DNA of 64,000 nt from Eutreptiella sp. 'Long Island Sound 2002' (GCA_964036045.1 OZ038378.1:3162001-3226000), one strand, 5' to 3'; counted from the stretch's first letter, positions 1-64,000 are shown. Translations and numbers: made by a program. The notes: generated by a model not told the origin, from the sequence alone.

Positions 1-1
1 G

Positions 2-44152: not shown

Positions 44153-44803
44153 ATGCAGGGTAAAATACTGTACAGTGTTCGAGGTCAGGTCAGGTCAGCC
44201 ACAGACAGGCTGGCTAATGAACACGCTCAGCAAGCACGGGACATATACCACAAAGCTCACATAGGGGCGGTGGCGAGACAACACCTGCACACCCTACACA
44301 TGGTATACACCAACGCACTGACGGCTAAAACAGACTACCACAGGCTTGTCACAAAACTAGTCGACCAACAGAGACAAGCACAACGACTGCAGGACACACA
44401 TGCACACCTATACCAAATACGTAGACAATGGTATGAACAAGCGAAGGACGACACAAGGATGTGGTACGCTGACGCAAAACTGCTGATGATGGTCAACGAC
44501 CGATACCGGAGGCTGAGAGCAGGCACTAACAAGCTACTTGACCTGCACCAACAACAAGCGACCTACATGTGGCAGCAGCAGACACACCTGACTGCCATGG
44601 CACAGTACTACCATGACGCCTGCAAACACAAGACAACACAATACTGGCAAACAACCCGACCAGCCCGACAGACAATATACCTGATACGGAAGCGGCCGCG
44701 GGAGCGCTGGGACCCCACCTTGTGGGAAGTCCCGTTACAACCGCTACCGAAACGCCACAAAACGCACTGGGACCCAAATGAGTGGGAAGTACCAATGACA
44801 TGA
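44153..44803 (+). CDS. Orphan 216-aa ORF, Gln/His/Thr/Tyr-rich, with two WDPxxWEVP motifs
   Basis: Uninterrupted non-repetitive ORF; AG at 44115-44116 follows the pyrimidine-rich microsatellite. No family recognised. Confidence 0.4.
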   Translation: MQGKILYSVRGQVRSATDRLANEHAQQARDIYHKAHIGAVARQHLHTLHMVYTNALTAKTDYHRLVTKLVDQQRQAQRLQDTHAHLYQIRRQWYEQAKDDTRMWYADAKLLMMVNDRYRRLRAGTNKLLDLHQQQATYMWQQQTHLTAMAQYYHDACKHKTTQYWQTTRPARQTIYLIRKRPRERWDPTLWEVPLQPLPKRHKTHWDPNEWEVPMT

Positions 44804-44984
44804 CTACACCAACCTCAATGGGAAACCATGGGGGCACAGTCACGAGCTGCAGCCCGTATGCATACCCTGGCTTCGCCGAAATCTGTATCTTACTTCGAAC
44901 TTGGTCCACTGAGGCCCCTGGCACTTATGAACTGGCCTTTTTGATAAAAAATTTTTTTTTTCCTCCCCGCGCTTGGCGTTGCGG

Positions 44985-47900
44985 ACCCCTGAGAATGCAG
45001 GGGTGACGTAGCATTACGGCCCTCTTTTGGGCACCCCAGAAGGTAGGGGTGAGGTAGCCACTTCTGATTTTCTTCCCCTTTCTTGGGGACGCCCGAGAAC
45101 GCAGGGGTGACTTAGCATCTGCGCCCTCCTCTCGGCCCCCGAGAAGGCAGGGGTGAGGCAGCCACTTCTGATTTTGTTCCCCTTTGTTGGGGACCACTTC
45201 TGATTTTGCTCCCCGCACTTGGCATTGGGGACCCCCGAGAATGCAAGGGGTGACTTAGCATTTCTGCCCCCTTTTGGGCCCCCCAGAAGGCAGGGGTGAG
45301 GTCGCCACTTCTGATTTTGTTTCCCTTTGTTGGGGATCCCGGAGAATGCAGGGGTGACGTAGCATCTCTCACCTCTTTTGGGCCCCCCAGAAGGCAGGGT
45401 GAGGCAGCCACTTTTGATTTTGTTCCTCTTTGTTGGGGACCACTTCTGATTTTGCTCCCCGCGCTTGGCGTTGGGGATCCCCGAGAATGCAAGGGTGACG
45501 TAACATTACCGCCCCCTTTTGGGCCCCCGAGAAGGCAGGGGTGAGGCAGCCCCTTCTGATTTTGTTCCCCTTTGTTGCGGACCACGTCTGATTTTGCGCC
45601 CCGTGCTCAGTGTTGGGGACCCCCGAGAATGTCGGGGTGGCGTAGCATTACCGCCCTCTTTTGGGCCCCCGAGAAGGCAGGGGTAACACAGCCCCTTCTG
45701 ATTTTGTTCCCCTTTGTTGGGGACCACTTCTGATTTTGCGCCCCGTGCTCAGTGTTGGGGACCCCCGAGAATGTAGGGGTGACGTAGCATTTTTCCCCTC
45801 TTTTGGGCCCCCGAGAAGGCAAGGGTGAGGCAACCACTTCTAATTTTGTTCCCCTTTGTTGGTGACCACTTGTGGTTTTGCTCCCCGCGCTTGGCCTTGG
45901 GGACCCCCGAGAACGGCGGGGTGACGTAGCATCTCTCACCTCTTTTGGGCCCCCCGGAAGCTAGGGGTGAGGTAGCCACTTCTGATTTTGTTCCCCTTTG
46001 TTGCGGACCACTTCTGATTTTGCTTCACGCGCCTGTCGTTGTGGACCTTGGAGAATGCAGAGGTGACGTAGCATTACGACCCTCTTTTGGGCCCCCGGAA
46101 GGCAGGGGTGATGTAGCCACTTCTGATTTCGTTCCCCTTGTTTGGGGACCCCCGAGAATGCAGGGGTGACGTAGCATTACCACCCTCTTTCGGGCCTCCC
46201 AGAAAGCAGGTGTGAGGCAGCCACTTCTGATTTTCCTCCTTGCTCTTTGCGTGGGGACCCCGAGATTGCAAGGGTGACGTAGCATTACCGCCCTCTTTTG
46301 GGCCCCCGAGAAGGCAGGGTGAGGCAGCCCCTTCTGATTTTGTTCCCCTTTGTTGGGGACCACTTCTGATTTTGCGCCCCGTGCTCGGTGTGGGGACCCC
46401 CGAGAATGTAGGGGTGACGTAGCATTACCGCCCTCTTTTGGGCCTCCGAGAAGGCAGGGGTGACACAGCCCCTTCTGATTTTGTTCCCCTTTGTTGGGGA
46501 CCACTTCTGATTTTGCGCCCCGTGCTCAGTGTTGGGGACCCCCGAGAATGTAGGGGTGACGTAGCATTACCGCCCTCTTTTGGGCCCCCGAGAAGGCAGG
46601 GGTGAGGCAACCACTTCTGATTTTGCTCCTCTTTGTTGGTGACCACTTCTGATTTTGTTCCCCGCACTTGGCGATGGGGACCCCCGAGAATGCAAGGGGT
46701 GACGTAGCATTTTTGCCCCCTTTGGGGCCCCCGAGAAGGCAGGGGTGAGGCAGCCACTTCTGATTTTCCTCCCCTCGCTCGGCGTTGCGGACCCTGTAGA
46801 ATGCACGGGTGACGTAGCATTGCTGCCCTCTTTCGGGCCCCCTAGAAGGTAGGGGTGAGGTAGCCACTTCTGATTTTCTTCCCCTTTCTTGGGGACGCCT
46901 AAGAATGCAGGGGTGACGTAGCATCTCCGCCCTCTTTTGGGCCCCCGAGAAGGCAGGGGTGAGGCAGCCACTTCTGATTTTGTTCCCCTTTGTTCGGGAC
47001 CACGTCTGATTTTGCTCCTTGTGCTTGGCGTCGGGAACCGCCAAGAATGCAGGGGTGACGTGCCGTTTCTGCCCTCCTTTGGGCTCTTGTGACGGCACGT
47101 GTGAGGCAACCACTTCTGACTTTGTTCCCCTTTGTTGGGGACCACTTCTGGTTTTGCGCCCCGTGCTCAGCGTTGGGGACCCCCGAGAATGTAGGGGTGA
47201 CGTAGCATTTCCGCCCTCTTTTGGGCCCCCGAGAAGGCAGCGGTGGGGCTGCCACTTCTGATTTTCCTCCCCGCGCTTGGCGTTGCGGACCCCTGAGAAT
47301 GCAGGGGTGACGTAGCATTACGGCCCTCTTTTGGGCCCCCAGAAGGTAGGGGTGAGGTAGCCACTTCTGATTTTGTTCCCTGTTGTTGGGGACGCCCAAG
47401 AATGCAGGGGTGACGTCGCATCTCTGCCCTCTTTTGGGCCCCCTAGAAGGCAGGGGTGAGGTAGCCACTTCTGATTTCGTTCCTGTTTGTTGGGGACCCC
47501 CGAGAACGCAGGGGTGACGTAGCATCTCCGCCCTCCTTTGGGCCCCCGAGAAGGCAGGGGTGAAGCAGCCACTTCTGATTTTGTCCCCTTTGTTGTGGAC
47601 CACTTCTGATTTTGCTCCCCGCGCTTGGCATTGTCGACCCTGGAGAATGCAGGCTGATGTAGCATTACGGCCCTCTTTCGGCCCCCCCGGAAGGCAGGGG
47701 TGATGTAGCCACTTCTGATTTCGTTCCCCTTTGTTGGGGACCCCCGAGAATGCAGCGGTGACGTAGCATCGCTCACCTCTTTTGGGCCCCCGAGAAGGCA
47801 GGTGTGAGGCAGCCACTTCTGATTTTGTTCCTCTTTGTTGGGGACCACTTCTGATTTTGCTCCCCGCGCTTGGCGTTGGGGATCCCCGAGAATGCAGGGG

Positions 47901-47995
47901 TGACGTAGCATTACCGCCCACTTTTGGGCCCCTTAGAAGGCAGGGGTGAAGTTGCCACTTCTGATTTTGTTCCCCTTTGTTCCAGGCAGTGGTGA
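44985..47995. repeat. Satellite array of ~104-bp and ~142-bp monomers; further pieces at ~48395-48580 (and amplicon copies), 60589-60690 and 61505-61740
   Basis: Subunits A (gggacccccgagaatgcaggggtgacgtagc...), B (gggcccccgagaaggcaggggtgaggcagccacttctgattttg...) and optional C (ggggaccacttctgattttgctcccc...). Confidence 0.95.
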
Positions 47996-50383
47996 GGCAG
48001 CCACTTCCGATGTTGTGTCCTTGGGAGGGAGGGAGGGTGGGTGGCTCCGTAGCCCAAGCTTTTCACCATTGGACGACTCCTTTCTTGTTTTGTTGGGTGA
48101 GTGGTTACTTGTATGCCATCTTTTTGCATTCAACGGTCCCAGCACATGTAGAGGATGGTGCTTTTCTGCCTTACCCTTACCCGTGGGAAGTTTGGGGTGA
48201 TGTTCATGCAGGGTAGAGAAGAGCACACCGGTCCATGTCCGTGAAAAGATAAGACCCGGTTTATGGGGCAAAAGTAGATCCTCATGCTGTACATGAGCAG
48301 ATGATGTACGTGAGCAGCAACCCATGAGATGTAGCAAATGTGAGGTGAGTAAAAGGAGAAAACCCCCTCCCCCCCATATCCCCCACCGGCGCCTTGTGGG
48401 CCCCCGAGGAGGCGGGGGTGAAGTAGCCAATTTTGATTTTGTCCCCCTTGTTGGGGACCCCGAGAATGCAAGGATTACATAGCAATTCCACCCTCTTGTG
48501 GGCCCCCGAGAAGCAGGGGTTAGGTAGCCACTATGCCCACACGTGGGCCATTTCTGATTTTGTCCCCGTGCGGAGCATTGGGAGCCATTGATTTCTCCCC
48601 AGTAGCGGGGGCCACTTTTTAAATGCAACCGTCAGCCCGCGGACAAGGGGCCCCTGGCGCGGGCCGCCAATTGCGAAGCGAAACGACTACGTCACAGACC
48701 TTGGCACCCGGTGACGTAGGGGGGTAGGGGGTAGGAAGTAGTATTGGGGCTCTGCTACTTCTGACCGAGGGAGTAACGCCCCTCCTCCTTAACCACAGTA
48801 GAAGGGTGAGACTTCCCTACCACGCTTCACACGTTGAGTTGGGGCCGTAGTCTTCACATTGATGGAGCGATGGTGTCAAGATCAACGTGTGCTATTTCTC
48901 GGTTATCTGGTTTGTTTCGGGAACAGTCTGCAGTGGTTCTCATGAAAGGCCTCGGTGGGCCGCAACACATATCTCAATATGCACTCTCAGCCGGCTGGGG
49001 TAACCGGGCTTGCAATTGGAGGGGGGGGGTCGATAGAGCCCCCTGGCTAGACCCCTCCCCCCCCAAAAAAGGGCTCAATTAACGGGACCCCCCAAAACCA
49101 CCCCTGGGTCCTTTGTGGTTCAAATGGCGGTGGTATTTGTGTTTAAGGACACTTGGTCCCCGGTCCATTCCGGCTACACATGAAATGTCTGGACTTTTCT
49201 GATCATGATATGTCATCACCAGCGCGAGGCTTGCAGCCTGTTACAATAGCATGCGATAGGCTGCGTGACTCCGAGTCCTCGGAGGACACAGCCTCAACTG
49301 TGAGCTTTCATGGCTCGGACATCAGCGGTGACCAGGAGGAAATCTGGACCCCACTGGCTGAACTACTCTTGATACACCGGTTCAACCAAGACAATGGCGT
49401 CGGCTCAACACCCCGAGTGTCGATGCCAGTTCACGACGACATTTGCACAGTGACAGACTGTTGATTGCCTCAGGCTTTCACACACCACTCTCGGACTTCC
49501 ATTAGGTGTGTGCTCATGGTTGAATATAGGCAAGCAATGCATAGCAGAAGCACACCTGGGTGGCCCTCCATTTTGGAGGCGCTCTCCTCAGTGGCGGCAG
49601 CGTAGCCGGTGGGAGCGGGGACCCGCCTGCACCCTGGTGATGTCGGTGTGTACCGAGAAGTTTTTTGCATTTTCAGGAACTTGTTCAGCTAACCAACCCT
49701 GGTGGTTTTGGACCCAGTTGCTGACATTGTCATCGTAGCACAGCAGATAACACACCTGGCTGGTACCCAGAGACGTGGATTCAATCCCCGTAGAGGCAAC
49801 AACGCCAATGGGAAAAGGGATCCTTTTTTTGCTTTGCACCAATCACAACATATGCAGCCCAGACTTTGGGCCGGTCGTGCTATTTGTACATACACAGTGT
49901 TGCATTAGCAGTCTGGTATCGCTTTCGTGCAGGCTTACCGCACCTTTGCCCCCTCTACCTTCCACAAAATCTCCTGACACTTCCCTTTGTAGTAACATAC
50001 TGACCCCTAAACACTTGGCCACGTAGTGCCAGCACAAGCCACGTGACGAGGATGTAGGTGCTACTGGGCGCCCCACCTGTAGTGTGCGATGGAAACATGG
50101 GCGTGTTGAGCAAAACAGGCCAAAGGTGGATACCATTGAAAGGTTGTTCATACGAAATTAAATGAGTTATCCTTGGAAGAACCGCCGAACATTGCTGCAT
50201 ATGCATACCAGGACATGTCTTTGTGGAGCGCTTTGTGACCTGCTTGTGGCCCAGCACACTCCCATCCTCCACCCCATTTCCTCCACCACATTTTCCCTGC
50301 TGCATCCTGCCCTTCATCCCATATCCACAGCCCTGCCCAATTGCATCCATCATTCTGACCCTTTGACTTCCAGATCTCTCACA

Positions 50384-50719
50384 ATGCCAAAGCAACCCAA
50401 GACTACCCCCAAACACCCTTCGTACTCTGATATGGTTGAGGAGGCCATCGGGGTCATTGCCAAGCCTCTCAAAGGGGCCAAGGGTCAAAGGGGTGCCAGT
50501 CGAGCCAGCATCGTCAAGTACGTGGAGGCCACGTATGGCTTGGAGCGCTTGCGCAAGACCCCCTTTCGCCTGGCACTCAAGAGGCTTGTGACAAGGGGTG
50601 TGCTGACACCGGTCAAGGATAGCTACCTTCTGTCCAAGAGTGCCCAAAAGAAGCCGAAGGTGACCAGGGCCACAAAGCCCAAGGCAAAGGTGGTGCAGAA
50701 GCCGGTGAGCAGGCATTAG
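50384..50719 (+). CDS. Linker histone H1-like protein with winged-helix (H15) globular domain, 111 aa, copy 1
   Basis: HPSYSDMVEEAI...RGASRASIVKYVEATY...FRLALKRLVTRGVLTPVKDSYLL matches the GH1 consensus, followed by a short K/P/A tail. A long pyrimidine tract and AG (50372-50373) precede the ATG. Confidence 0.85.
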   Translation: MPKQPKTTPKHPSYSDMVEEAIGVIAKPLKGAKGQRGASRASIVKYVEATYGLERLRKTPFRLALKRLVTRGVLTPVKDSYLLSKSAQKKPKVTRATKPKAKVVQKPVSRH

Positions 50720-51219
50720 CCTCCCAAGCCCAAGCCTCGGCCCTCAACCGGTTGATTGCCTTGATTCTCAAAGAGCTGCACAGAATGCCAGCGCTCCAAT
50801 CAAGAAGTTTGCTGTGGACGGTGCCGTTGTTATCTGTGCAGAACCGTAAGTGCAGTTATGGATGATGATTGCACCGACCGCACAGCCATAGGCTTGCCCT
50901 TGGTTGCTAATTGCTCCGTGTGTCATATCCTCAACACACCCCTTCTCCCTTCTCTTTATTTCTATGTGTATGTGTGTGTGTGCGTGTTTGAGTGCTGCAG
51001 AGAAGTTGTTATAGCACTTGCGGCATTTCTTGGTTGTGTTGTGCCCCATTGCTATTGTATGAGCGCACACGTTTGGGGGTTTGGATGACGTATATGTGCA
51101 ATTAGGAAGATGCGACCCCCTACGCAGTGCGAACCTCTTATTTTGCCAAACTGAAGCCAACGTGGATCTCCAGCAAAGCCCGGACGCGCACAAACAATCA
51201 CAGCATACACCAGCATCGC

Positions 51220-51310
51220 ACAGCATAGCACAGCACAGCACGGCACAGCACGGCACTGCACGGCACGGCACGGCACGGCACGGCACGGCACGGCACACCA
51301 CAGCGCACCA
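51220..51310. repeat. (GCACG/GCACA)n pentanucleotide microsatellite within the amplicon unit (also at ~55925-56015)
   Basis: Direct reading. Confidence 0.9.
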
Positions 51311-54300
51311 CAGCATCGCACAGCATGGGATACCACAGGCCACCATATCACAGCACTGCACACAACCAGATAATTGGGGACATGCTTCACCAATCTGATC
51401 ATCGTCAACCACTGTGCACACAGCAAATCATTGACCGAATGTCACCAACTCACACCACGGACTCGAAATTGGAACTCTAGGTATTCAAATATGGAGGGCA
51501 CAGATGCCGCAGGGCGAGTGTTTAGTGAGTGGATCCTGCAGGTCTCCTGTTGGTATCCGGAGCCGGCGGCCCCAGGGTTGCCCCCGCTGTGTCTGGCCTC
51601 CCAATTGCTTCGGTCCTCCTTCCTCGTGTCGGCTTTCCCTCACCCAACCCTCCGCCGTGCCGATGACCTCCTCCCCCGTTACCGTACCCCGCGCCCGTGT
51701 TGTGCTTCCCACCTCTGCATCCCCCCCCCCCCCCCCAGCTCCGCTTCCCGGTGCAGCTCCCTCCACTGTGGGCCCGCTCTGTACAATACTTCGTCTCATT
51801 CTTAGTACATGATGCTCCTGATTGCATCCGCCTACGCAACCCCATTTCGACTCTGATCACTCTGCAGTCTTGTTGTGAGGACGACTTTGCATGCACCCTT
51901 TTTGCTGCCAGGCCCCTGCACCAGGGAGAGGGAGATGGGGTGTAGGATGGGTGTCACGACTGCTGCTTTGCCTGAGCTACCTTGAACTTGCATATTGTGC
52001 TTTTGACTGCCCTTTGCCTTTTGTTTCCTGGTTCGGCCATGAATGGGTTTTGAACCGTGTTGACACCCCTGGAAGCGCTTCCCCTCTCGGTACTATAACA
52101 GACCTGTCAAGACGTCTCAGACTACCCCGCCCTGGACTTGGGATACCCACAACCAGACATTTGTGGAGCATGTCCAGCATCGGAGGGCGGGGGTCTAGAC
52201 AAGGGGCAGTCGTGATGGATCGTACACGAACAGGTGGTCAGTCCTCAAGGCTGCGGTGGCTTGAAAATGTGTCCCAAAGTGGCCCACATGAAGTCTTTTT
52301 TCGAAAAATTGTCTCCCCCACAAGACGTTACTTAGATTGGTCAGCACGTCACGGGGATAGCTTAGACCCACATTTGTTGGTGCCTCGACCTTCATTTGCA
52401 GGTACATCCGCAATCTACATCTTCAACCTGTCGGCCGTGCCTCGTCCTCTCTTTGTCGGATACCCCTGACTTAGTTGACGGTTCGGCCAACCTTGAGCCT
52501 TCTTGGCCCTCAGATTTCAGACAGTCTCAACTCATCTCACTTCACTGCTCCTAGCCCTCCTCAGCTGGTCTTGGGGCTTTGTCACTAGAGCCCCCCCCCC
52601 CCCCCGCCCCTTGGGGGGGGTCCAAAAAGTGGGCACTAACAAGCCCCCTTCTCCCAGGCAAGTGAGTTCCATTCGTGCTCACTTTTGCACTATTGTGTCT
52701 GTCCTACTCCTGGGGCGGGTGGATGGGAGGGAGGGAGGGAGGGTGGGTGGCTCCGTAGCCCAAGCTTTTCACCATTGGACGACTCCTTTCTTGTTTTGTT
52801 GGGTGAGTGGTTACTTGTATGCCATCTTTTTGCATTCAACGGTCCCAGCACATGTAGAGGATGGTGCTTTTCTGCCTTACCCTTACCCGTGGGAAGTTTG
52901 GGGTGATGTTCATGCAGGGTAGAGAAGAGCACACCGGTCCATGTCCGTGAAAAGATAAGACCCGGTTTATGGGGCAAAAGTAGATCCTCATGCTGTACAT
53001 GAGCAGATGATGTACGTGAGCAGCAACCCATGAGATGTAGCAAATGTGAGGTGAGTAAAAGGAGAAAACCCCCTCCCCCCCATATCCCCCACCGGCGCCT
53101 TGTGGGCCCCCGAGGAGGCGGGGGTGAAGTAGCCAATTTTGATTTTGTCCCCCTTGTTGGGGACCCCGAGAATGCAAGGATTACATAGCAATTCCACCCT
53201 CTTGTGGGCCCCCGAGAAGCAGGGGTTAGGTAGCCACTATGCCCACACGTGGGCCATTTCTGATTTTGTCCCCGTGCGGAGCATTGGGAGCCATTGATTT
53301 CTCCCCAGTAGCGGGGGCCACTTTTTAAATGCAACCGTCAGCCCGCGGACAAGGGGCCCCTGGCGCGGGCCGCCAATTGCGAAGCGAAACGACTACGTCA
53401 CAGACCTTGGCACCCGGTGACGTAGGGGGGTAGGGGGTAGGAAGTAGTATTGGGGCTCTGCTACTTCTGACCGAGGGAGTAACGCCCCTCCTCCTTAACC
53501 ACAGTAGAAGGGTGAGACTTCCCTACCACGCTTCACACGTTGAGTTGGGGCCGTAGTCTTCACATTGATGGAGCGATGGTGTCAAGATCAACGTGTGCTA
53601 TTTCTCGGTTATCTGGTTTGTTTCGGGAACAGTCTGCAGTGGTTCTCATGAAAGGCCTCGGTGGGCCGCAACACATATCTCAATATGCACTCTCAGCCGG
53701 CTGGGGTAACCGGGCTTGCAATTGGAGGGGGGGGGTCGATAGAGCCCCCTGGCTAGACCCCTCCCCCCCCAAAAAAGGGCTCAATTAACGGGACCCCCCA
53801 AAACCACCCCTGGGTCCTTTGTGGTTCAAATGGCGGTGGTATTTGTGTTTAAGGACACTTGGTCCCCGGTCCATTCCGGCTACACATGAAATGTCTGGAC
53901 TTTTCTGATCATGATATGTCATCACCAGCGCGAGGCTTGCAGCCTGTTACAATAGCATGCGATAGGCTGCGTGACTCCGAGTCCTCGGAGGACACAGCCT
54001 CAACTGTGAGCTTTCATGGCTCGGACATCAGCGGTGACCAGGAGGAAATCTGGACCCCACTGGCTGAACTACTCTTGATACACCGGTTCAACCAAGACAA
54101 TGGCGTCGGCTCAACACCCCGAGTGTCGATGCCAGTTCACGACGACATTTGCACAGTGACAGACTGTTGATTGCCTCAGGCTTTCACACACCACTCTCGG
54201 ACTTCCATTAGGTGTGTGCTCATGGTTGAATATAGGCAAGCAATGCATAGCAGAAGCACACCTGGGTGGCCCTCCATTTTGGAGGCGCTCTCCTCAGTGG

Positions 54301-55089
54301 CGGCAGCGTAGCCGGTGGGAGCGGGGACCCGCCTGCACCCTGGTGATGTCGGTGTGTACCGAGAAGTTTTTTGCATTTTCAGGAACTTGTTCAGCTAACC
54401 AACCCTGGTGGTTTTGGACCCAGTTGCTGACATTGTCATCGTAGCACAGCAGATAACACACCTGGCTGGTACCCAGAGACGTGGATTCAATCCCCGTAGA
54501 GGCAACAACGCCAATGGGAAAAGGGATCCTTTTTTTGCTTTGCACCAATCACAACATATGCAGCCCAGACTTTGGGCCGGTCGTGCTATTTGTACATACA
54601 CAGTGTTGCATTAGCAGTCTGGTATCGCTTTCGTGCAGGCTTACCGCACCTTTGCCCCCTCTACCTTCCACAAAATCTCCTGACACTTCCCTTTGTAGTA
54701 ACATACTGACCCCTAAACACTTGGCCACGTAGTGCCAGCACAAGCCACGTGACGAGGATGTAGGTGCTACTGGGCGCCCCACCTGTAGTGTGCGATGGAA
54801 ACATGGGCGTGTTGAGCAAAACAGGCCAAAGGTGGATACCATTGAAAGGTTGTTCATACGAAATTAAATGAGTTATCCTTGGAAGAACCGCCGAACATTG
54901 CTGCATATGCATACCAGGACATGTCTTTGTGGAGCGCTTTGTGACCTGCTTGTGGCCCAGCACACTCCCATCCTCCACCCCATTTCCTCCACCACATTTT
55001 CCCTGCTGCATCCTGCCCTTCATCCCATATCCACAGCCCTGCCCAATTGCATCCATCATTCTGACCCTTTGACTTCCAGATCTCTCACA

Positions 55090-55425
55090 ATGCCAAAGCA
55101 ACCCAAGACTACCCCCAAACACCCTTCGTACTCTGATATGGTTGAGGAGGCCATCGGGGTCATTGCCAAGCCTCTCAAAGGGGCCAAGGGTCAAAGGGGT
55201 GCCAGTCGAGCCAGCATCGTCAAGTACGTGGAGGCCACGTATGGCTTGGAGCGCTTGCGCAAGACCCCCTTTCGCCTGGCACTCAAGAGGCTTGTGACAA
55301 GGGGTGTGCTGACACCGGTCAAGGATAGCTACCTTCTGTCCAAGAGTGCCCAAAAGAAGCCGAAGGTGACCAGGGCCACAAAGCCCAAGGCAAAGGTGGT
55401 GCAGAAGCCGGTGAGCAGGCATTAG
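55090..55425 (+). CDS. Linker histone H1-like protein, copy 2
   Basis: Identical translation to copy 1. Confidence 0.85.
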   Translation: MPKQPKTTPKHPSYSDMVEEAIGVIAKPLKGAKGQRGASRASIVKYVEATYGLERLRKTPFRLALKRLVTRGVLTPVKDSYLLSKSAQKKPKVTRATKPKAKVVQKPVSRH

Positions 55426-58400
55426 CCTCCCAAGCCCAAGCCTCGGCCCTCAACCGGTTGATTGCCTTGATTCTCAAAGAGCTGCACAGAATGCCAGCGC
55501 TCCAATCAAGAAGTTTGCTGTGGACGGTGCCGTTGTTATCTGTGCAGAACCGTAAGTGCAGTTATGGATGATGATTGCACCGACCGCACAGCCATAGGCT
55601 TGCCCTTGGTTGCTAATTGCTCCGTGTGTCATATCCTCAACACACCCCTTCTCCCTTCTCTTTATTTCTATGTGTATGTGTGTGTGTGCGTGTTTGAGTG
55701 CTGCAGAGAAGTTGTTATAGCACTTGCGGCATTTCTTGGTTGTGTTGTGCCCCATTGCTATTGTATGAGCGCACACGTTTGGGGGTTTGGATGACGTATA
55801 TGTGCAATTAGGAAGATGCGACCCCCTACGCAGTGCGAACCTCTTATTTTGCCAAACTGAAGCCAACGTGGATCTCCAGCAAAGCCCGGACGCGCACAAA
55901 CAATCACAGCATACACCAGCATCGCACAGCATAGCACAGCACAGCACGGCACAGCACGGCACTGCACGGCACGGCACGGCACGGCACGGCACGGCACGGC
56001 ACACCACAGCGCACCACAGCATCGCACAGCATGGGATACCACAGGCCACCATATCACAGCACTGCACACAACCAGATAATTGGGGACATGCTTCACCAAT
56101 CTGATCATCGTCAACCACTGTGCACACAGCAAATCATTGACCGAATGTCACCAACTCACACCACGGACTCGAAATTGGAACTCTAGGTATTCAAATATGG
56201 AGGGCACAGATGCCGCAGGGCGAGTGTTTAGTGAGTGGATCCTGCAGGTCTCCTGTTGGTATCCGGAGCCGGCGGCCCCAGGGTTGCCCCCGCTGTGTCT
56301 GGCCTCCCAATTGCTTCGGTCCTCCTTCCTCGTGTCGGCTTTCCCTCACCCAACCCTCCGCCGTGCCGATGACCTCCTCCCCCGTTACCGTACCCCGCGC
56401 CCGTGTTGTGCTTCCCACCTCTGCATCCCCCCCCCCCCCCCAGCTCCGCTTCCCGGTGCAGCTCCCTCCACTGTGGGCCCGCTCTGTACAATACTTCGTC
56501 TCATTCTTAGTACATGATGCTCCTGATTGCATCCGCCTACGCAACCCCATTTCGACTCTGATCACTCTGCAGTCTTGTTGTGAGGACGACTTTGCATGCA
56601 CCCTTTTTGCTGCCAGGCCCCTGCACCAGGGAGAGGGAGATGGGGTGTAGGATGGGTGTCACGACTGCTGCTTTGCCTGAGCTACCTTGAACTTGCATAT
56701 TGTGCTTTTGACTGCCCTTTGCCTTTTGTTTCCTGGTTCGGCCATGAATGGGTTTTGAACCGTGTTGACACCCCTGGAAGCGCTTCCCCTCTCGGTACTA
56801 TAACAGACCTGTCAAGACGTCTCAGACTACCCCGCCCTGGACTTGGGATACCCACAACCAGACATTTGTGGAGCATGTCCAGCATCGGAGGGCGGGGGTC
56901 TAGACAAGGGGCAGTCGTGATGGATCGTACACGAACAGGTGGTCAGTCCTCAAGGCTGCGGTGGCTTGAAAATGTGTCCCAAAGTGGCCCACATGAAGTC
57001 TTTTTTCGAAAAATTGTCTCCCCCACAAGACGTTACTTAGATTGGTCAGCACGTCACGGGGATAGCTTAGACCCACATTTGTTGGTGCCTCGACCTTCAT
57101 TTGCAGGTACATCCGCAATCTACATCTTCAACCTGTCGGCCGTGCCTCGTCCTCTCTTTGTCGGATACCCCTGACTTAGTTGACGGTTCGGCCAACCTTG
57201 AGCCTTCTTGGCCCTCAGATTTCAGACAGTCTCAACTCATCTCACTTCACTGCTCCTAGCCCTCCTCAGCTGGTCTTGGGGCTTTGTCACTAGAGCCCCC
57301 CCCCCCCCCCCGCCCCTTGGGGGGGGTCCAAAAAGTGGGCACTAACAAGCCCCCTTCTCCCAGGCAAGTGAGTTCCATTCGTGCTCACTTTTGCACTATT
57401 GTGTCTGTCCTACTCCTGGGGCGGGTGGATGGGAGGGAGGGAGGGAGGGTGGGTGGCTCCGTAGCCCAAGCTTTTCACCATTGGACGACTCCTTTCTTGT
57501 TTTGTTGGGTGAGTGGTTACTTGTATGCCATCTTTTTGCATTCAACGGTCCCAGCACATGTAGAGGATGGTGCTTTTCTGCCTTACCCTTACCCGTGGGA
57601 AGTTTGGGGTGATGTTCATGCAGGGTAGAGAAGAGCACACCGGTCCATGTCCGTGAAAAGATAAGACCCGGTTTATGGGGCAAAAGTAGATCCTCATGCT
57701 GTACATGAGCAGATGATGTACGTGAGCAGCAACCCATGAGATGTAGCAAATGTGAGGTGAGTAAAAGGAGAAAACCCCCTCCCCCCCATATCCCCCACCG
57801 GCGCCTTGTGGGCCCCCGAGGAGGCGGGGGTGAAGTAGCCAATTTTGATTTTGTCCCCCTTGTTGGGGACCCCGAGAATGCAAGGATTACATAGCAATTC
57901 CACCCTCTTGTGGGCCCCCGAGAAGCAGGGGTTAGGTAGCCACTATGCCCACACGTGGGCCATTTCTGATTTTGTCCCCGTGCGGAGCATTGGGAGCCAT
58001 TGATTTCTCCCCAGTAGCGGGGGCCACTTTTTAAATGCAACCGTCAGCCCGCGGACAAGGGGCCCCTGGCGCGGGCCGCCAATTGCGAAGCGAAACGACT
58101 ACGTCACAGACCTTGGCACCCGGTGACGTAGGGGGGTAGGGGGTAGGAAGTAGTATTGGGGCTCTGCTACTTCTGACCGAGGGAGTAACGCCCCTCCTCC
58201 TTAACCACAGTAGAAGGGTGAGACTTCCCTACCACGCTTCACACGTTGAGTTGGGGCCGTAGTCTTCACATTGATGGAGCGATGGTGTCAAGATCAACGT
58301 GTGCTATTTCTCGGTTATCTGGTTTGTTTCGGGAACAGTCTGCAGTGGTTCTCATGAAAGGCCTCGGTGGGCCGCAACACATATCTCAATATGCACTCTC

Positions 58401-59795
58401 AGCCGGCTGGGGTAACCGGGCTTGCAATTGGAGGGGGGGGGTCGATAGAGCCCCCTGGCTAGACCCCTCCCCCCCCAAAAAAGGGCTCAATTAACGGGAC
58501 CCCCCAAAACCACCCCTGGGTCCTTTGTGGTTCAAATGGCGGTGGTATTTGTGTTTAAGGACACTTGGTCCCCGGTCCATTCCGGCTACACATGAAATGT
58601 CTGGACTTTTCTGATCATGATATGTCATCACCAGCGCGAGGCTTGCAGCCTGTTACAATAGCATGCGATAGGCTGCGTGACTCCGAGTCCTCGGAGGACA
58701 CAGCCTCAACTGTGAGCTTTCATGGCTCGGACATCAGCGGTGACCAGGAGGAAATCTGGACCCCACTGGCTGAACTACTCTTGATACACCGGTTCAACCA
58801 AGACAATGGCGTCGGCTCAACACCCCGAGTGTCGATGCCAGTTCACGACGACATTTGCACAGTGACAGACTGTTGATTGCCTCAGGCTTTCACACACCAC
58901 TCTCGGACTTCCATTAGGTGTGTGCTCATGGTTGAATATAGGCAAGCAATGCATAGCAGAAGCACACCTGGGTGGCCCTCCATTTTGGAGGCGCTCTCCT
59001 CAGTGGCGGCAGCGTAGCCGGTGGGAGCGGGGACCCGCCTGCACCCTGGTGATGTCGGTGTGTACCGAGAAGTTTTTTGCATTTTCAGGAACTTGTTCAG
59101 CTAACCAACCCTGGTGGTTTTGGACCCAGTTGCTGACATTGTCATCGTAGCACAGCAGATAACACACCTGGCTGGTACCCAGAGACGTGGATTCAATCCC
59201 CGTAGAGGCAACAACGCCAATGGGAAAAGGGATCCTTTTTTTGCTTTGCACCAATCACAACATATGCAGCCCAGACTTTGGGCCGGTCGTGCTATTTGTA
59301 CATACACAGTGTTGCATTAGCAGTCTGGTATCGCTTTCGTGCAGGCTTACCGCACCTTTGCCCCCTCTACCTTCCACAAAATCTCCTGACACTTCCCTTT
59401 GTAGTAACATACTGACCCCTAAACACTTGGCCACGTAGTGCCAGCACAAGCCACGTGACGAGGATGTAGGTGCTACTGGGCGCCCCACCTGTAGTGTGCG
59501 ATGGAAACATGGGCGTGTTGAGCAAAACAGGCCAAAGGTGGATACCATTGAAAGGTTGTTCATACGAAATTAAATGAGTTATCCTTGGAAGAACCGCCGA
59601 ACATTGCTGCATATGCATACCAGGACATGTCTTTGTGGAGCGCTTTGTGACCTGCTTGTGGCCCAGCACACTCCCATCCTCCACCCCATTTCCTCCACCA
59701 CATTTTCCCTGCTGCATCCTGCCCTTCATCCCATATCCACAGCCCTGCCCAATTGCATCCATCATTCTGACCCTTTGACTTCCAGATCTCTCACA

Positions 59796-60131
59796 ATGCC
59801 AAAGCAACCCAAGACTACCCCCAAACACCCTTCGTACTCTGATATGGTTGAGGAGGCCATCGGGGTCATTGCCAAGCCTCTCAAAGGGGCCAAGGGTCAA
59901 AGGGGTGCCAGTCGAGCCAGCATCGTCAAGTACGTGGAGGCCACGTATGGCTTGGAGCGCTTGCGCAAGACCCCCTTTCGCCTGGCACTCAAGAGGCTTG
60001 TGACAAGGGGTGTGCTGACACCGGTCAAGGATAGCTACCTTCTGTCCAAGAGTGCCCAAAAGAAGCCGAAGGTGACCAGGGCCACAAAGCCCAAGGCAAA
60101 GGTGGTGCAGAAGCCGGTGAGCAGGCATTAG
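59796..60131 (+). CDS. Linker histone H1-like protein, copy 3
   Basis: Identical translation to copy 1. Confidence 0.85.
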   Translation: MPKQPKTTPKHPSYSDMVEEAIGVIAKPLKGAKGQRGASRASIVKYVEATYGLERLRKTPFRLALKRLVTRGVLTPVKDSYLLSKSAQKKPKVTRATKPKAKVVQKPVSRH

Positions 60132-60912
60132 CCTCCCAAGCCCAAGCCTCGGCCCTCAACCGGTTGATTGCCTTGATTCTCAAAGAGCTGCACAGAATGC
60201 CAGCGCTCCAATCAAGAAGTTTGCTGTGGACGGTGCCGTTGTTATCTGTGCAGAACCGTAAGTGCAGTTATGGATGATGATTGCACCGACCGCACAGCCA
60301 TAGGCTTGCCCTTGGTTGCTAATTGCTCCGTGTGTCATATCCTCAACACACCCCTTCTCCCTTCTCTTTATTTCTATGTGTATGTGTGTGTGTGCGTGTT
60401 TGAGTGCTGCAGAGAAGTTGTTATAGCACTTGCGGCATTTCTTGGTTGTGTTGTGCCCCATTGCTATTGTATGAGCGCACACGTTTGGGGGTTTGGATGA
60501 CGTATATGTGCAATTAGGAAGATGCGACCCCCTACGCAGTGCGAACCTCTTATTTTGCCAAACTGAAGCCAACGTGGATCTCCAGCAAGACCCCCGAGAA
60601 TGCAGTGGTTCTGTAGCAATTCCGCCCTCTTGTTGTCCCCCGAGAAGGTAGGGGTGACGCAACCCCTTCTGATTTTGTCCCCCTTGTGACCACGACTTTG
60701 CAAGTAACCATGAATTTGCAATTGAAAGTACGGGTTTCTATCGCCTTGGGGGGCCTAAATGTCATCGTTTGAGTGCCCGGGGACCACCACTTTCCAAGTA
60801 CTCATGAATTTGCAATTGAAAGTACAGGTTTCTATGGCCTTGGGGAGCCTAGATGTCAATGGTCACACACATATATATGTGTGTGTGAGCTCGTATCCGT
60901 TGCTTATGGCCC

Positions 60913-61110
60913 TTATGCCAAGCCACGTTCCAGGACCGAAACCATCCTAGGTACAAACATCTCCGAAAATTTCTGACAAAATTCCGGCATTCCGTCTTTA
61001 CCTGCTGAGGAGCCGGCCTTTAGGGTTTCCCATGCCGCAGTCACGACATCCGCCGTGAGCGGCAAACAAACAGCAAGGGCGACACCGCTTTGATCTTGGC
61101 AGGTAGCGGC
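60913..61110 (-). mobile_element. LINE fragment, region immediately N-terminal to the RT core
   Basis: PLTADVVTAAWETLKAGSSAGKDGMPEFCQKFSEMFVPRM matches P.T..E...A...L..GKAPG.DG.P.EFY..F....P. Confidence 0.7.
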
Positions 61111-61379
61111 AAACTTCAAAGATACCCCTTGCACTCCCCCTCCCCCGCCTCCTATCACCCCCGACCAATATTCCGGCAGTCAGTTAGCCCGGCCACTTTT
61201 TTCGACCCAAAATGCAATACTCCTACCAAATGTTTCAAAGAAGACAGATGCTTGCAATCTTGTAGCTAGAGGACTAAATCATGTATTCCCAGACGACGGT
61301 TCTGCTGAGCCTCTGCCCGTTCTGCCTGCGACCTCAATTGCCTTCGCAAACTTGTGACCTGTTTGTTCCGAAATTCTAT

Positions 61380-62233
61380 GGGGGCGCCTCAAGCGCAGTG
61401 CGCGCGCAGTGCAACTATTTGGGCGCCTGGCCGTACTAGAGACCCATACTTTGAGATACTAGGGGCCCCTAGGGGCATCATGGTGACCCGTAGCGGAGGT
61501 TTTGACTTCTGATTTTGTCCCCCTTTGTTTGGGGACCCCTGAGAATGCAGGGGTGACATAGCATTTCCGCCCTCTTTTGGGCCCCAACCTTCCGGTGCTA
61601 TTGAGGAAACCGGGACAATCTTTGATTCCACGCTTTGTTGCATGGAGCATCATGGTGACCCCTAGCGTAGACTTTGTCTTCTGATTTTGTTCCCTTTGTT
61701 GTGGACCCCCGAGAATGCAGGGGTGACGTAGCATTTCCGCCCACATGTATGGACTGCACCTACACAGGAGGACAATGATGATGAGGATGTTGTGGGTGAT
61801 GATGGGGATGTTTGTGCCCTTTGTTGCACCAAGTTTGACCCTGAAAAGATGTTCATGTGTGACAAGTGTGAGCTGCAATATTGTACGGATTGCATTGACA
61901 CACACACATGTGACAATGTGACTTTTCTTTGATTCTGCAACTGTGTCATGTTGTGCACATAAGTTGCGTATTCTCAATGTGTACTTAGTTGACAATGGAA
62001 CAGAGAGACAGTTGTGTGTTCTTGAGGGTGGCGACCAATGCGCTGTTCATGGCTTTTCCAGTTGTGCATGATGTGTGTTATGTGAAGGGAAGGTAGTTTG
62101 CAACTTTCTTGAGCCGGGGCAATTTGGGTCACTTAATTCTAAGGGCGTTTCCAAGGGGTGTGCTTGGGGGCTCTTCGGGGGGAACATAGTCTAAAAGTAG
62201 CGCGCAGTGCGCGCGCAGTGCAAAGATTCCCCC
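61380..62233 (+). mobile_element. Non-autonomous GGGGG/CCCCC element with 3-bp TSD (TAT), copy 2
   Basis: TAT at 61377-61379 and 62234-62236. The 257-bp right arm (61977-62233) and ~125-bp left arm align with copy 1 at 6967-7665. Confidence 0.8.
61741..61932 (+). pseudogene. 5'-truncated cargo reading frame: acidic linker plus Cys/His zinc finger (PHD/AN1/B-box-like spacing)
   Basis: Not in the ORF track (no start codon). Reads EDNDDEDVVGDDGDVCALCCTKFDPEKMFMCDKCELQYCTDCIDTHTC, i.e. C-x2-C-x11-C-x2-C-x4-C-x2-C-x3-H-x-C. Confidence 0.6.
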
Positions 62234-63079
62234 TATTGCCTCCGGCAAGGCATCTCAAAGAGAGTGCTAGAACACTAGAGTCAAACAAGCAAGCTTACAG
62301 TCAACTAATAAGCTAGTCAGTTAGGCAGGCAGTCTATGAGGCAGGCAGGCATGTAGGCAGAAACACCTAGTTTGGTTTTTCTGTTGTTTTCTCTCGGCTA
62401 GTGTGCAGACATCTGCAGCACATAAGAAAAAATTATTGGGACAGCACAACAAGCCAGAAATATTTAGCCGTGCATCCCACAATAAATATATTGGCCATTG
62501 GAACCTTGATTGTATGCAGCAAGGATGCCAACAGCCGTGCCTGCTGGGAGGTCCTGGAGTTCCAGAAAGGCAGGGTGGCTCCAGCCCATGCGCACAGTTC
62601 GCGCATACACCAACTCTTGCTTTGAAGCGGTGCGACCGGTCCAAAGCTAGAAGAAGAGCTGTCCGAAGCTAGTGCAAAAAACTTGGACTGCCTCACCGCC
62701 TCCCCCTCGGATGTGTGGACAGGTGCAACAATGGTGTGCATATTCCTGCGTGCTGAATATTTTGAGCGGTAAGCTGGTGCCACTACCCCGCCAACCATTG
62801 TTGTGGTTGCTGCATCCTCCTCCAAATCATTAACTGGCCCACACCACTTCACAATGCGGTGAAGCAAACAGAACAAGCCCGAGATAGCATTGCTGGTTAG
62901 GGTAGGCCACCAGTGACCGTGGTAGAAGCACCATCCAAAAGAACTAGCCCTGCCTGTCAAAATGAAGGGACCGATTTGACCCAGACAAAGACAGAGAGAA
63001 GGGACCAATTGGCAACCATCGGCACTGGCCAAAAAGTCAGCTAATGTCGGCCAGTCGCGAAAATCCCATTTTGTCAGTT

Positions 63080-63355
63080 GGCTAGTTCGGCGAGCAAGTT
63101 CATCAACGGAACTTGGGGGAACGGTGGCGAAGCTGTGGAGACATGGGGAAAATGGGACTGGGAAAAATTGGAAATTGGTCCCAATTTGTCCCATTTTTGT
63201 CCGATTTTCCTCCCGTTTCCTACCAATTTCACACATTTTTTATACATTTGCCACAAAATATTTATGGCAATTTCCCAAAAGTCCCCATTTCCCCCCATTT
63301 TCCCCCGCTTCCCCCCATTTTGCCACCATTTCCCATTTTCCCCATTTTCCTTCAC
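63080..63355. repeat. Low-complexity ggaaaatggg/cccattttcc repeat element with inverted arms
   Basis: The purine-rich left half mirrors the pyrimidine-rich right half. Confidence 0.55.
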
Positions 63356-63847
63356 CTCTGCGGGTAGTCGGCTAATTTGGCTGCGGCTGACACCGATGCC
63401 TGAACAGTTGGACCCAGCCAGTCAAAAGAAAGAAGAAGAAAGTGCCCTCACCTTCCAATCGTCCGCTTTTTGTTTGCAGCCCCTTCATGGTATGAAAATA
63501 GAGCTATGTGGGGCCCATGGAAGCCCCCTTGTGGGTCGTGGACAAATCCTATGGCCTACCCCACGGCCGCACATCCGTGGGTTCAATCCACTGCAGCCCA
63601 CGCAAGCGCCGTCAACAGCGCTTGGGGCTGCAGAAATTGCGCTTCTGTGGAGCACTCGCTTGAACAGTGCCCGCATCCATGGCTTTGCTGGCGTTGCGGC
63701 CAATCGGGGCACACGCATCATGTTTGTCGCACGCCGGACAGTGCACTTCACAATATCTGGAATGGCTACTACACAGGGCATTCCTATCCCAATGGGTCAG
63801 ATTATCCACCAACTCCCAAGGCTCCACCAAACTCAGTGTCCAGGTCC

Positions 63848-64000
63848 ACTCCAATACCCCCCCAATCCCACACAGCGGCCCAGCTCCACGCGTCCACCAC
63901 TCCAATACCCCCCCAATCCCACACAACGGCCCAGCTCCACGCGTCCACCACTCCAATACCCCCCCAGTCCCACACAGCGGCCCAGCTCCACGCGTCCACC
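63848..64000. repeat. 51-bp minisatellite, at least 3 copies, running to the window edge
   Basis: Unit actccaatacccccccaatcccacacagcggcccagctccacgcgtccacc at 63848, 63899 and 63950. Confidence 0.9.

What the first reader, a model, noticed from the sequence alone, without database searches (positions are those of the whole stretch)
48023..60588. Satellite-embedded 4.7-kb tandem amplicon carrying a winged-helix linker histone H1
Seen: ~2.67 essentially identical 4706-bp units. The array is entered and exited mid-unit (48023 and 60588) with satellite on both sides, and each unit carries an internal satellite fragment and one intact H1-like gene with its own pyrimidine tract/AG. Known: histone genes are often tandem, but usually as multi-histone clusters; no core histone gene is recognisable here. 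Inference: partial first and last units fit rolling-circle amplification/reintegration of a 4.7-kb circle or satellite-mediated unequal exchange. This could be an H1 variant that amplifies within, and possibly packages, the satellite it lives in.
Basis: partly seen in the sequence, partly recalled or inferred. Interest (0 to 1): 0.8.

Follow-up and report, generated by a model that had tools for sequence, protein, structure and literature searches.

The report
Tandem H1-variant gene block in satellite
In a euglenid alga, a 12.6-kb head-to-tail block (2.67 copies of a 4.7-kb unit) carrying an expressed short-tailed linker-histone H1 variant sits cleanly inside one repeat of a common satellite, which looks like a pre-formed DNA concatemer (possibly from a circle) pasted into the chromosome.

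Summary
Window 48023-60588 is 2.67 head-to-tail copies of a 4,706-bp unit. The copies have no substitutions and differ only in the length of two poly-C runs.

Each unit has one intronless 111-aa H1 gene with a winged-helix globular domain. Four RNA contigs start with the euglenid spliced-leader end joined at the predicted AG, so the gene is expressed.

The genome's canonical H1 lies elsewhere (contig C6), in classical H2A-H3-H1-H2B-H4 repeat units. Every gene there ends in a histone 3' stem-loop. The window gene has no stem-loop and no core-histone neighbour, and its tail is only 25 residues. It is an orphon, replacement-type H1 variant.

The two flanks of the block rejoin without a gap into one continuous satellite repeat, and no donor copy exists elsewhere in the assembly. 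The block is therefore an insertion of a concatemer.

Satellite-mediated unequal exchange is not supported. "H1 that packages its satellite" has no support either: the satellite is dispersed genome-wide and absent from the canonical H1 arrays.

Copy number rests on one assembly lineage. The scan had already noted this gene on this same window (s1-206741).

The parts
44958..48025 (.). Left flank: array of a 104/142-bp satellite family. It ends ...CCTTGGG at 48025; GGG 48023-48025 is shared with the start of the insert.
   Evidence: TRF rows and family D1. The family is dispersed genome-wide.
48023..60588 (+). Inserted block: 2.67 head-to-tail copies of a 4,706-bp unit (48023-52728, 52729-57434, 57435-60588).
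   Evidence: The flanks rejoin in satellite register.
48387..48532 (.). Satellite-like fragment inside the unit (about 1.4 monomers, about 80% identical to the flank). Repeated at 53093-53238 and 57799-57944.
   Evidence: blastn of unit 2 against the window; sequence read.
48513..48932 (.). Copy of an abundant dispersed repeat (unit positions 491-910; at least 8,175 first-look candidates in the genome). Also present in units 2 and 3.
50270..50373 (+). Pyrimidine-rich tract and AG trans-splice acceptor (AG = 50372-50373). Copies at 55078-55079 and 59784-59785.
   Evidence: RNA contigs L042 and L046-L048 carry (A)TTTTTTTTCG joined to 50374/59786. The pattern CTATTTTTTTTCG|GTA occurs 1,673 times in the genome against 1 for the control.
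50384..50719 (+). H1 variant CDS, copy 1 (111 aa, intronless).
   Evidence: Pfam PF00538; PDB H1.0/H5 matches; AF2 model and Foldseek; genome search.
55090..55425 (+). H1 variant CDS, copy 2 (identical).
59796..60131 (+). H1 variant CDS, copy 3 (identical). This is the copy whose mRNA is documented.
59786..60948 (+). Minimum extent of the mature mRNA of copy 3: 10-nt 5'UTR after the spliced leader, the CDS, and at least 817 nt of 3'UTR that crosses the right junction into the flank.
   Evidence: L046 is 100% identical to 59785-60948. L042, L047 and L048 agree.
51177..52728 (+). Part of the unit missing from the last copy (unit positions 3155-4706; second copy at 55883-57434). It is unique to this locus apart from a short CACGG-type repeat and a 150-bp dispersed repeat.
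60589..60690 (.). Right flank: a single satellite monomer starting GACCCCCGAGAATGCAG. It continues the left array's register exactly.
60691..61375 (.). Single-copy right flank (includes a 94-bp x1.8 local repeat at 60688-60858).
   Evidence: the search found only the window's own copy.
61376..62235 (.). Copy of an abundant, young dispersed element (at least 6,549 candidates, up to 98% identity). It carries satellite-like monomers itself, at 61507-61585 and about 61670-61740.

Best explanation
The window comes from a euglenid nuclear genome (2.28 Gb) that uses spliced-leader trans-splicing.

The 12.57-kb block is a head-to-tail concatemer of a 4,706-bp segment. It was inserted by end joining into one monomer of a common 104/142-bp satellite; 3 nt (GGG) are shared at the left join and none at the right. 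A concatemer of at least 1.67 units most likely arose outside this site. The likeliest source is an excised circular copy that was replicated by rolling circle or multimerised. Unequal exchange between copies may later have changed the copy number.

The unit's only recognisable gene is an old, diverged H1 paralogue that lives outside the histone clusters (an orphon). It keeps the nucleosome-binding winged helix, has a 6-7-residue loop insertion and has only a 25-residue basic tail. Its mRNA is trans-spliced 10 nt before the ATG and has a 3'UTR of more than 800 nt. It lacks the histone 3' stem-loop that every clustered histone gene of this genome carries.

I therefore infer that it is expressed like a replacement-type linker histone rather than an S-phase one, and that it binds chromatin more weakly and more dynamically than the canonical H1.

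Shown here: the array, the insertion signature, the gene, its expression and the lack of a stem-loop. Inferred: the circular intermediate, the timing of expression and the biochemical behaviour.
For: Array:
- 2.67 units with no substitutions between copies.

Insertion:
- Window ...CCTTGGG (48025) joined to GACCCCCGAG... (60589) aligns to satellite repeats without a gap at the join. The match is 19/19 around the join and 80-85% over 320 nt.
- Beyond the single right monomer the flank is single copy.

No donor:
- The protein search scored all 59 candidates. Only the three window copies are 100% identical; the next best is 56%.
- The unit and its 3155-4706 part match nowhere else except through short dispersed repeats.

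Not a blanket assembly effect:
- Neighbouring units of the C6 histone arrays differ by 3-22 mismatches per 3.3 kb in the same assembly.

Gene:
- PF00538, E 6e-11.
- phmmer matches to human H1.0, E 3e-8, with helix 3 LALKRLVTRGVL against LSIKRLVTTGVL.
- The AF2 model has the order a1-b1-a2-a3-b2-b3. Linker-histone structures fill Foldseek ranks 1-22, target-normalised TM 0.44-0.82, around 0.75-0.8 for the best matches.

Expression:
- One Logan and three JGI RNA contigs begin with the spliced-leader end and are 100% identical to copy 3 through the right junction.

Variant status:
- C6 units are H2A-H3-H1-H2B-H4 quintets with five GGTGTT-TTTC/G-AACACC stem-loops per unit, all on the sense strand.
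- There are none on either strand in 48023-62400.
- The tail is 25 aa with 9 K/R, against 57-68 aa with 30-36 K/R in the canonical H1.

Age:
- dS is about 0.8 and dN/dS about 0.43 against the canonical H1. The gene lineage is old and has been under constraint, while the amplification is brand new or homogenised.

Context from papers:
- Euglenids keep their rDNA on extrachromosomal circles (PMC9082867).
- eccDNA has been detected in E. gracilis (10.1101/2023.11.29.569251).
- Trypanosomatids use tandem repeats and extrachromosomal amplicons to adjust dosage (10.64898/2026.07.29.740908).
Against: - No circle, no read-level data and no empty-site allele are available. A fragment of a chromosomal array that was later lost, or that is unassembled, would leave the same footprint.
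- Copy number and the left and internal junctions rest on one assembly lineage. The ENA contig has 0 mismatches to the window.
- Perfect identity of the copies could also come from gene conversion or from polishing.
- All four RNA contigs are of the copy-3 type. ORFs from the 3155-4706 part, or spanning the 3154/3155 join, occur only in the genomic ENA contig. Expression of copies 1 and 2 is therefore undocumented, and the amplification may not raise dosage.
- No poly(A) tail was seen on any contig, so 'polyadenylated replacement-type mRNA' is an inference from the missing stem-loop.
- No orthologue of the variant was found, but only the word-based search was run.
Confidence: 0.55

Rival explanations
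1. In-place tandem duplication. The H1 variant is native to this spot and was duplicated and then triplicated locally, by replication slippage, template switching or unequal sister-chromatid exchange. The result would be U(1-3154)-F(3155-4706)-U-F-U, with the right flank as the gene's original 3' region.
For: - Any non-integer array can be written this way.
- All four RNA contigs use the right flank as 3'UTR, which would fit if that flank were the original context.
- The left join lies in a (GGGA)n tract.
- Tandem gene arrays are common in Euglenozoa (10.64898/2026.07.29.740908; PMC3486875).
Against: - The sequence directly left of U and the sequence directly right of the last U are two halves of one satellite repeat in perfect register. 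The duplication boundaries would have to coincide exactly with the boundaries of an earlier insertion.
- The spacer F has no source elsewhere in the genome.
Confidence: 0.15
2. Piece of a pre-existing chromosomal array. An H1-variant tandem array existed elsewhere, and a 12.6-kb fragment was moved or copied into a break in the satellite. The source was later lost, or lies in unassembled DNA. No circular intermediate is needed.
For: - It would leave the same footprint as the circle model: a periodic insert, arbitrary phase at both ends and seamless flanks.
- This genome does hold long histone arrays.
- 2,317 contigs leave room for unassembled repeats.
Against: - There is no trace of a second copy of the gene, the unit or F in 2.28 Gb.
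- A recent transfer (no substitutions between units) should have left its source behind, unless the event was cut-and-paste.
Confidence: 0.2
3. Assembly artefact in the copy number. The locus contains the unit, but the true number of copies differs from three (two, or many more), because identical 4.7-kb repeats were mis-resolved or homogenised by polishing.
For: - No substitutions in 7.86 kb of overlap, and the only differences are homopolymer lengths typical of long-read error.
- The only second assembly is virtually the same sequence.
- No RNA contig shows the 3154/3155 join.
Against: - F is unique sequence joined on its two sides to the end and the start of U, so at least U-F-U must exist.
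- The same assembly keeps 0.1-1.4% differences between neighbouring C6 histone units, so it does not generally collapse or homogenise arrays.
- The right junction is confirmed by four RNA assemblies.
Confidence: 0.1

Closest known systems
Replacement-type linker histones of animals (H1.0 / H5)
   Same: - They are the best sequence and fold matches: E 3e-8, 30-38% identity across the H1.0/H5 globular-domain structures, target-normalised TM up to about 0.8, and a nearly identical recognition helix.
- The gene is solitary, lies outside the histone cluster and has no histone 3' stem-loop.
   Different: - It is only 111 aa, with a 25-residue tail against about 100.
- It has a 6-7-residue insertion between helix 1 and strand 1.
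- Its mRNA is capped by spliced-leader trans-splicing.
- It is not an orthologue. It shares lineage-specific motifs (MP.K..PKHP.Y, KDSY) with this genome's own H1 genes.
- Polyadenylation and cell-cycle behaviour were not shown.
Histone orphons (solitary histone genes derived from tandem clusters; own knowledge, Childs et al. 1981)
   Same: It is an H1 gene away from the H2A-H3-H1-H2B-H4 repeat units on C6. It still shares 80 nt of DNA similarity with them around the acceptor and the first codons.
   Different: - It is old and strongly diverged (about 52% aa identity, dS about 0.8).
- It has lost the stem-loop.
- It is itself locally amplified.
Trypanosomatid H1 gene arrays
   Same: Both are euglenozoan, both have trans-spliced mRNAs, and both have H1 genes in small polymorphic tandem arrays without core histones (PMC3486875).
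   Different: Kinetoplastid H1 lacks the globular domain altogether (PMC3486875). This protein is mostly globular domain. In this euglenid the canonical H1 sits in mixed five-histone units.
Genomic insertions and translocations through circular DNA intermediates. Examples: eccDNA reintegration (reviews PMC9527254, PMC8414719); cattle colour-sidedness KIT translocations and Leishmania amplicons (own knowledge); the euglenid rDNA circle (PMC9082867).
   Same: The insert is head-to-tail with arbitrary phase at its ends, the target site rejoins seamlessly, and no donor copy is left.
   Different: No circle, no permuted donor and no deletion scar was observed here. The intermediate is inferred only.
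Short-tailed stress-inducible plant H1.3 (own knowledge)
   Same: Both have a conserved globular domain with markedly shortened, less basic tails alongside long-tailed main H1s.
   Different: The two are unrelated in descent, and nothing is known about how the euglenid gene is regulated.

Membership tests
Linker histone H1/H5 (Pfam PF00538) | Globular-domain sequence match above the curated threshold | tested here: met
   42.9 bits against a cut-off of 22.4, E 5.9e-11, profile positions 1-63 of 74. phmmer against PDB H1.0 gives E 3.3e-8.
Linker histone H1/H5 (Pfam PF00538) | Winged-helix fold (three helices plus a beta hairpin wing) | tested here: met
   AF2 model, pLDDT 71: H14-25, E36-39, H40-51, H58-70, E74-77, E80-83. 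Linker-histone (H1.0, H5, H1.4) structures fill Foldseek ranks 1-22; target-normalised TM is about 0.75-0.8 for the best matches, range 0.44-0.82.
Linker histone H1/H5 (Pfam PF00538) | Long lysine-rich C-terminal tail | tested here: inconclusive
   The tail is basic but only 25 aa with 9 K/R. The genome's other H1s have 57-68 aa with 30-36 K/R.
Linker histone H1/H5 (Pfam PF00538) | Binds linker DNA / the nucleosome dyad | not testable with these tools
   This needs biochemistry or ChIP.
Canonical (cluster-borne, stem-loop) histone genes of this genome | Sits in a repeat unit together with core histone genes | tested here: not met
   PF00125 matches recur in the C6 arrays, and none lies in the window. 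The one unit read in full (L026-L049-L027) is H2A-H3-H1-H2B-H4. No other Pfam domain was found in the ORFs of the window's unit.
Canonical (cluster-borne, stem-loop) histone genes of this genome | Histone 3' stem-loop directly after the stop codon | tested here: not met
   There are five per C6 unit and one after the C5 H1. There are none on either strand in 48023-62400, and no RF00032 match at E<=1 in 44000-64000 or in RNA contig L046.
Circle-derived (eccDNA / rolling-circle) concatemer insertion | Insert periodic from end to end, with non-integer copy number | tested here: met
   12,566 bp = 2.67 x 4,706. Identity starts at 48023 and stops at 60588.
Circle-derived (eccDNA / rolling-circle) concatemer insertion | Flanks rejoin into an uninterrupted target sequence | tested here: met
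   The joined flanks align without a gap to satellite repeats across the join.
Circle-derived (eccDNA / rolling-circle) concatemer insertion | Donor locus deleted, or circularly permuted relative to the insert | tested here: inconclusive
   No other copy exists in the assembly. That fits excision, but no deletion scar can be identified.
Circle-derived (eccDNA / rolling-circle) concatemer insertion | Physical circles of unit length | not testable with these tools
   This needs exonuclease-treated DNA with outward PCR or sequencing.
Array made by unequal exchange between satellite repeats | Satellite sequence at the joins between successive units | tested here: not met
   The joins at 51176/51177 and 52728/52729 have no satellite similarity. 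The only satellite piece lies at unit positions 365-510.
Gene-carrying transposon (e.g. Helitron) array | Transposition protein, or further copies at other sites | tested here: not met
   The unit occurs at this locus only. None of the 13 other unit ORFs tested has a Pfam match.
Kinetoplastid-type H1 | Only a C-terminal-like basic domain, with no globular domain (PMC3486875) | tested here: not met
   The globular domain is present.

The most novel reading that the evidence does not exclude
The 4.7-kb unit is, or recently was, a self-maintaining extrachromosomal circle carrying the H1 variant, analogous to the euglenid rDNA circle. The chromosomal block would be one reintegrated rolling-circle product. 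Exchange between circle and chromosome, plus unequal crossing-over, would then make the dose of this linker-histone variant differ between cells and strains.
Probability: 0.1. Interest if true: 0.75.

Novelty: new member of a known kind. Interest (0 to 1): 0.45.

Why it matters
This locus is a clean natural footprint of a concatemer pasted into a chromosome of a euglenid. Euglenids already keep their rDNA on circles, yet structural genome dynamics in the group are almost unstudied. The locus offers specific junctions (48025/48026, 51176/51177, 60588/60589) for PCR and long-read tests of circle formation, reintegration and copy-number variation.

It also shows that euglenids have a metazoan-like division of labour. 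Clustered five-histone units carry 3' stem-loops, while a dispersed stem-loop-less H1 variant lies apart from them. This contrasts with kinetoplastids, whose H1 has no globular domain. The contrast is useful for reconstructing linker-histone evolution in Euglenozoa.

Tried and rejected
1. My first model was in-place U-F-U-F-U duplication with the right flank as the native 3' region, based on the RNA contigs. I demoted it once the flanks proved to be one continuous satellite repeat.

2. I assumed that euglenid histones would sit in single-class arrays as in trypanosomatids. That was wrong: the C6 units are full five-histone quintets.

3. I scanned metagenome contigs for the 3154/3155 join, to look for mRNAs of copies 1 and 2. 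The scan was blank, but so was the positive control with the right-junction pattern that the JGI contigs do contain. The result is uninformative. The exact-ORF look-up is only weak evidence.

4. The ENA contig ctg8227_30x_l cannot serve as independent confirmation. It has 0 mismatches and 3 gap bases against the window over 23.8 kb, so it probably comes from the same data.

5. Rfam gave no match on two putative SL-RNA loci. The spliced-leader identification rests on the 1,673-fold CTATTTTTTTTCG|GTA pattern, the sequence read, and my recollection of the Euglena spliced leader.

6. Species identity was not settled. The published E. gracilis assembly has 46 chromosomes with a maximum of 121 Mb (PMC11252322), whereas contig C1 here is 201 Mb. 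I call the organism a euglenid only.

7. It holds older repeats (95-99.6% identical) at several offsets, and they run off the fetched piece. I did not resolve it.

8. The word-based protein search for orthologues of the variant found only the gene itself. I did not run the large HMMER search, so I make no claim that relatives are absent.

9. I made no complex prediction, because no binding claim is made.

Full report
**1. The observation**

Self-comparison of the window shows three in-register copies with a period of 4,706 bp: 48023-52728, 52729-57434 and 57435-60588. That is 12,566 bp, or 2.67 units.

Units 2 and 3 are identical over 3,154 bp. Units 1 and 2 have no substitutions and differ only by one base in each of two poly-C runs, at 51736 and 52590.

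A 3-kb array of a 104/142-bp repeat lies to the left (44958-48025). Each unit holds a satellite-like piece of about 146 bp at unit positions 365-510.

**2. The organism**

The window is G000:C1:3162001-3226000 of a 2.28-Gb assembly. Four RNA contigs of the H1 gene begin with (A)TTTTTTTTCG, which is not in the genome at that place. The motif CTATTTTTTTTCG followed by GTA occurs 1,673 times in the genome, against once for the reversed control. One such locus reads ...ACACTTTCTAGGTGTCTATTTTTTTTCG|GTATA.

From my own knowledge this is the euglenid spliced leader and its donor site. I therefore take the organism to be a euglenid. The species is not settled: the published E. gracilis assembly has a different chromosome size range (PMC11252322).

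**3. The gene**

The ORF at 50162-50719 contains a linker-histone domain (PF00538, 42.9 bits). The RNA contigs place the trans-splice acceptor at AG 50372-50373, 10 nt before the ATG at 50384. The CDS is 50384-50719 (111 aa), with identical copies at 55090 and 59796. The contigs are colinear with the genome, so there is no intron.

The protein matches human H1.0 and chicken H5 structures. An AlphaFold model built on a 17-sequence alignment gives the winged-helix order of elements. Its best structural matches are linker-histone globular domains.

Compared with euglenid-type H1s, the protein has a 6-residue insertion (AKGQRG) after helix 1 and a tail of only 25 residues.

**4. The rest of the H1 family in this genome**

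A six-frame search finds only three identical copies of this gene, all in the window. It also finds about 27 copies of a 53-56% identical H1 in two arrays on contig C6, and one more H1 on C5.

The C6 genes encode ordinary long-tailed H1s. Their relatives at 54-75% identity occur in other public data.

The C6 units (about 3.8 kb) are complete five-histone units, H2A-H3-H1-H2B-H4, all on one strand. Each gene is followed by the same stem-loop, GGTGTT-TTTC/G-AACACC. There are five per unit on the sense strand and none on the antisense strand. The C5 gene has one too.

The window gene and its surroundings (48023-62400, both strands) have none, and Rfam finds none either. Its mRNA runs at least 817 nt past the stop codon.

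The window gene is therefore an H1 variant outside the clusters, without the mark of cluster-type histone mRNAs. Against the C6 H1, dS is about 0.8 and dN/dS about 0.43. The lineage is old and has been under constraint.

**5. What the array is**

I first read the structure as U(1-3154)-F(3155-4706)-U-F-U made in place, because all four RNA contigs follow the third copy across 60588 into the right flank.

That reading does not survive a look at the flanks. The left flank ends ...GTGTCCTTGGG at 48025 and the right flank starts GACCCCCGAGAATGCAG at 60589. Joined, they read ...TTGGGGACCCCCGAGAATG..., which is the satellite's own sequence. The joined flanks align to satellite repeats across the join without a gap, 19/19 at the join and 80-85% over 320 nt.

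After that one monomer (60589-60690) the right flank is single-copy DNA. The whole 12.57-kb block is therefore an insertion into a satellite monomer, with 3 nt (GGG) shared at the left join.

The insert is periodic from its first base to its last, and its ends fall at arbitrary positions of the unit. Neither the gene, nor the unit, nor the 1.55-kb part missing from the last copy exists anywhere else in the assembly.

The simplest account is that a concatemer of at least 1.67 units was formed elsewhere and captured at a break. An excised circle copied by rolling circle, or a multimeric circle, fits this and would also explain why no donor is left. A fragment of a lost array fits the footprint equally well.

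Unequal exchange between the copies could later change the number. It would also produce one-copy alleles, which may explain why only flank-type transcripts are seen.

**6.

The joins between successive units carry no satellite sequence, so satellite-mediated unequal exchange did not build the array.

The satellite is a dispersed family with at least 2,965 first-look candidate places; the scored places lie on 13 of the large contigs. Satellite-like monomers are also part of an abundant young dispersed element just to the right, at 61376-62235.

No satellite similarity was found in the sampled C6 units, which cover about 87% of each unit, or in 1.2 kb beyond the array end. Nothing links this H1 functionally to the satellite.

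**7. Reliability**

In the same assembly, neighbouring C6 units differ by 3-22 mismatches per 3.3 kb, and the two C6 arrays are about 90% identical. The assembler therefore does not routinely erase differences between repeats.

Even so, the copy number and the left and internal joins are seen only in this assembly and in an ENA contig that is virtually the same sequence. The right join is independently confirmed by four RNA assemblies.

ORFs from the 3155-4706 part were found only in the genomic contig. Two DNA-pattern scans meant to test this were uninformative, because the positive control also failed.

**8. Comparison with what is known**

The protein is a member of the H1/H5 family. It behaves like a replacement-type or orphon linker-histone gene, not like the clustered type.

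Kinetoplastid H1 lacks the globular domain and sits in small H1-only arrays (PMC3486875). This euglenid has globular H1s and mixed five-histone units.

Circular DNA is established in euglenids as the rDNA circle (PMC9082867), and eccDNA has been detected in E. gracilis (10.1101/2023.11.29.569251). Reintegration of circular DNA is known from other systems (PMC9527254). None of these sources describes this locus.

**9. Verdict**

This is a real feature. It combines a new member of known kinds: an orphon H1 variant, and a concatemer insertion that is probably circle-derived. Interest is moderate. The locus makes circle formation and reintegration directly testable in a euglenid, but the proposed satellite-packaging role has no support.

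The gene model has no introns, so no joined-exon step arose.

Noticed in passing
G000:C6:133558577-133645786 and 134229534-134325285 (loci L024-L032, L049-L051, L053): This is the major histone locus. It holds tandem units of about 3.8 kb with H2A-H3-H1-H2B-H4 on one strand, each gene followed by the stem-loop GGTGTT-TTTC/G-AACACC. H3 and H2B appear to be split by an intron. Adjacent sub-arrays have PF00125 matches (the core-histone family) at 3.3-3.9-kb spacing and no H1 match. H1 tail length varies between units (138-155 aa).
   Followed up: partly
G000:C5:154895301-154897000 (L052): A third, single-copy H1 of 144 aa with a K/E-rich repetitive tail (KVKKETK repeats). It carries the best-scoring histone stem-loop of all (RF00032, 28.4 bits).
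   Followed up: partly
window 61376-62235: Copy of a very abundant, young dispersed element (at least 6,549 candidate places, many 97-98% identical). It contains satellite-like monomers and forms local arrays elsewhere (e.g. C9:15.765-15.772 Mb). It may be the source of the 104/142-bp satellite.
   Followed up: partly
G000:C1:51786-433173 and G000:C2:22677-1731212: The spliced-leader donor motif CTATTTTTTTTCGGTA (1,673 copies genome-wide) is concentrated at the starts of contigs C1 and C2, at spacings from under 2 kb to tens of kb. These look like large SL-RNA gene arrays near chromosome ends. Rfam has no matching family.
   Followed up: partly
window 36638-39181: A 28-bp minisatellite (TCGCCAATTTGGCGACGGATGGGTCCCG), about 91 copies at 72% match. 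The unit contains a palindromic core.
   Followed up: no
window 12311-12586: Five perfect copies of a 55-bp repeat inside a 200-codon ORF with no Pfam match.
   Followed up: no
window 2030-3070 (+) and 21441-22556 (-): An ORF with an FkbM-type methyltransferase domain (24.5 bits), and an ORF with an endonuclease/exonuclease/phosphatase domain just below threshold (24.4 against 24.5 bits). The second is possibly a retroelement endonuclease remnant in the GC-rich 14-28-kb stretch.
   Followed up: no
window 51199-51362 (and 55905-56068): A CACGG/CACAG-type short repeat inside the unit. It belongs to a family that forms kb-scale arrays on several other contigs (e.g. C18:25.105 Mb, C19:1.976 Mb, C14:24.51 Mb).
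   Followed up: no
It holds repeats 95-99.6% identical at offsets of 2,938, 3,602 and 6,540 bp that run off the fetched piece. It is an older and more complex amplification than the one in the window.
   Followed up: partly
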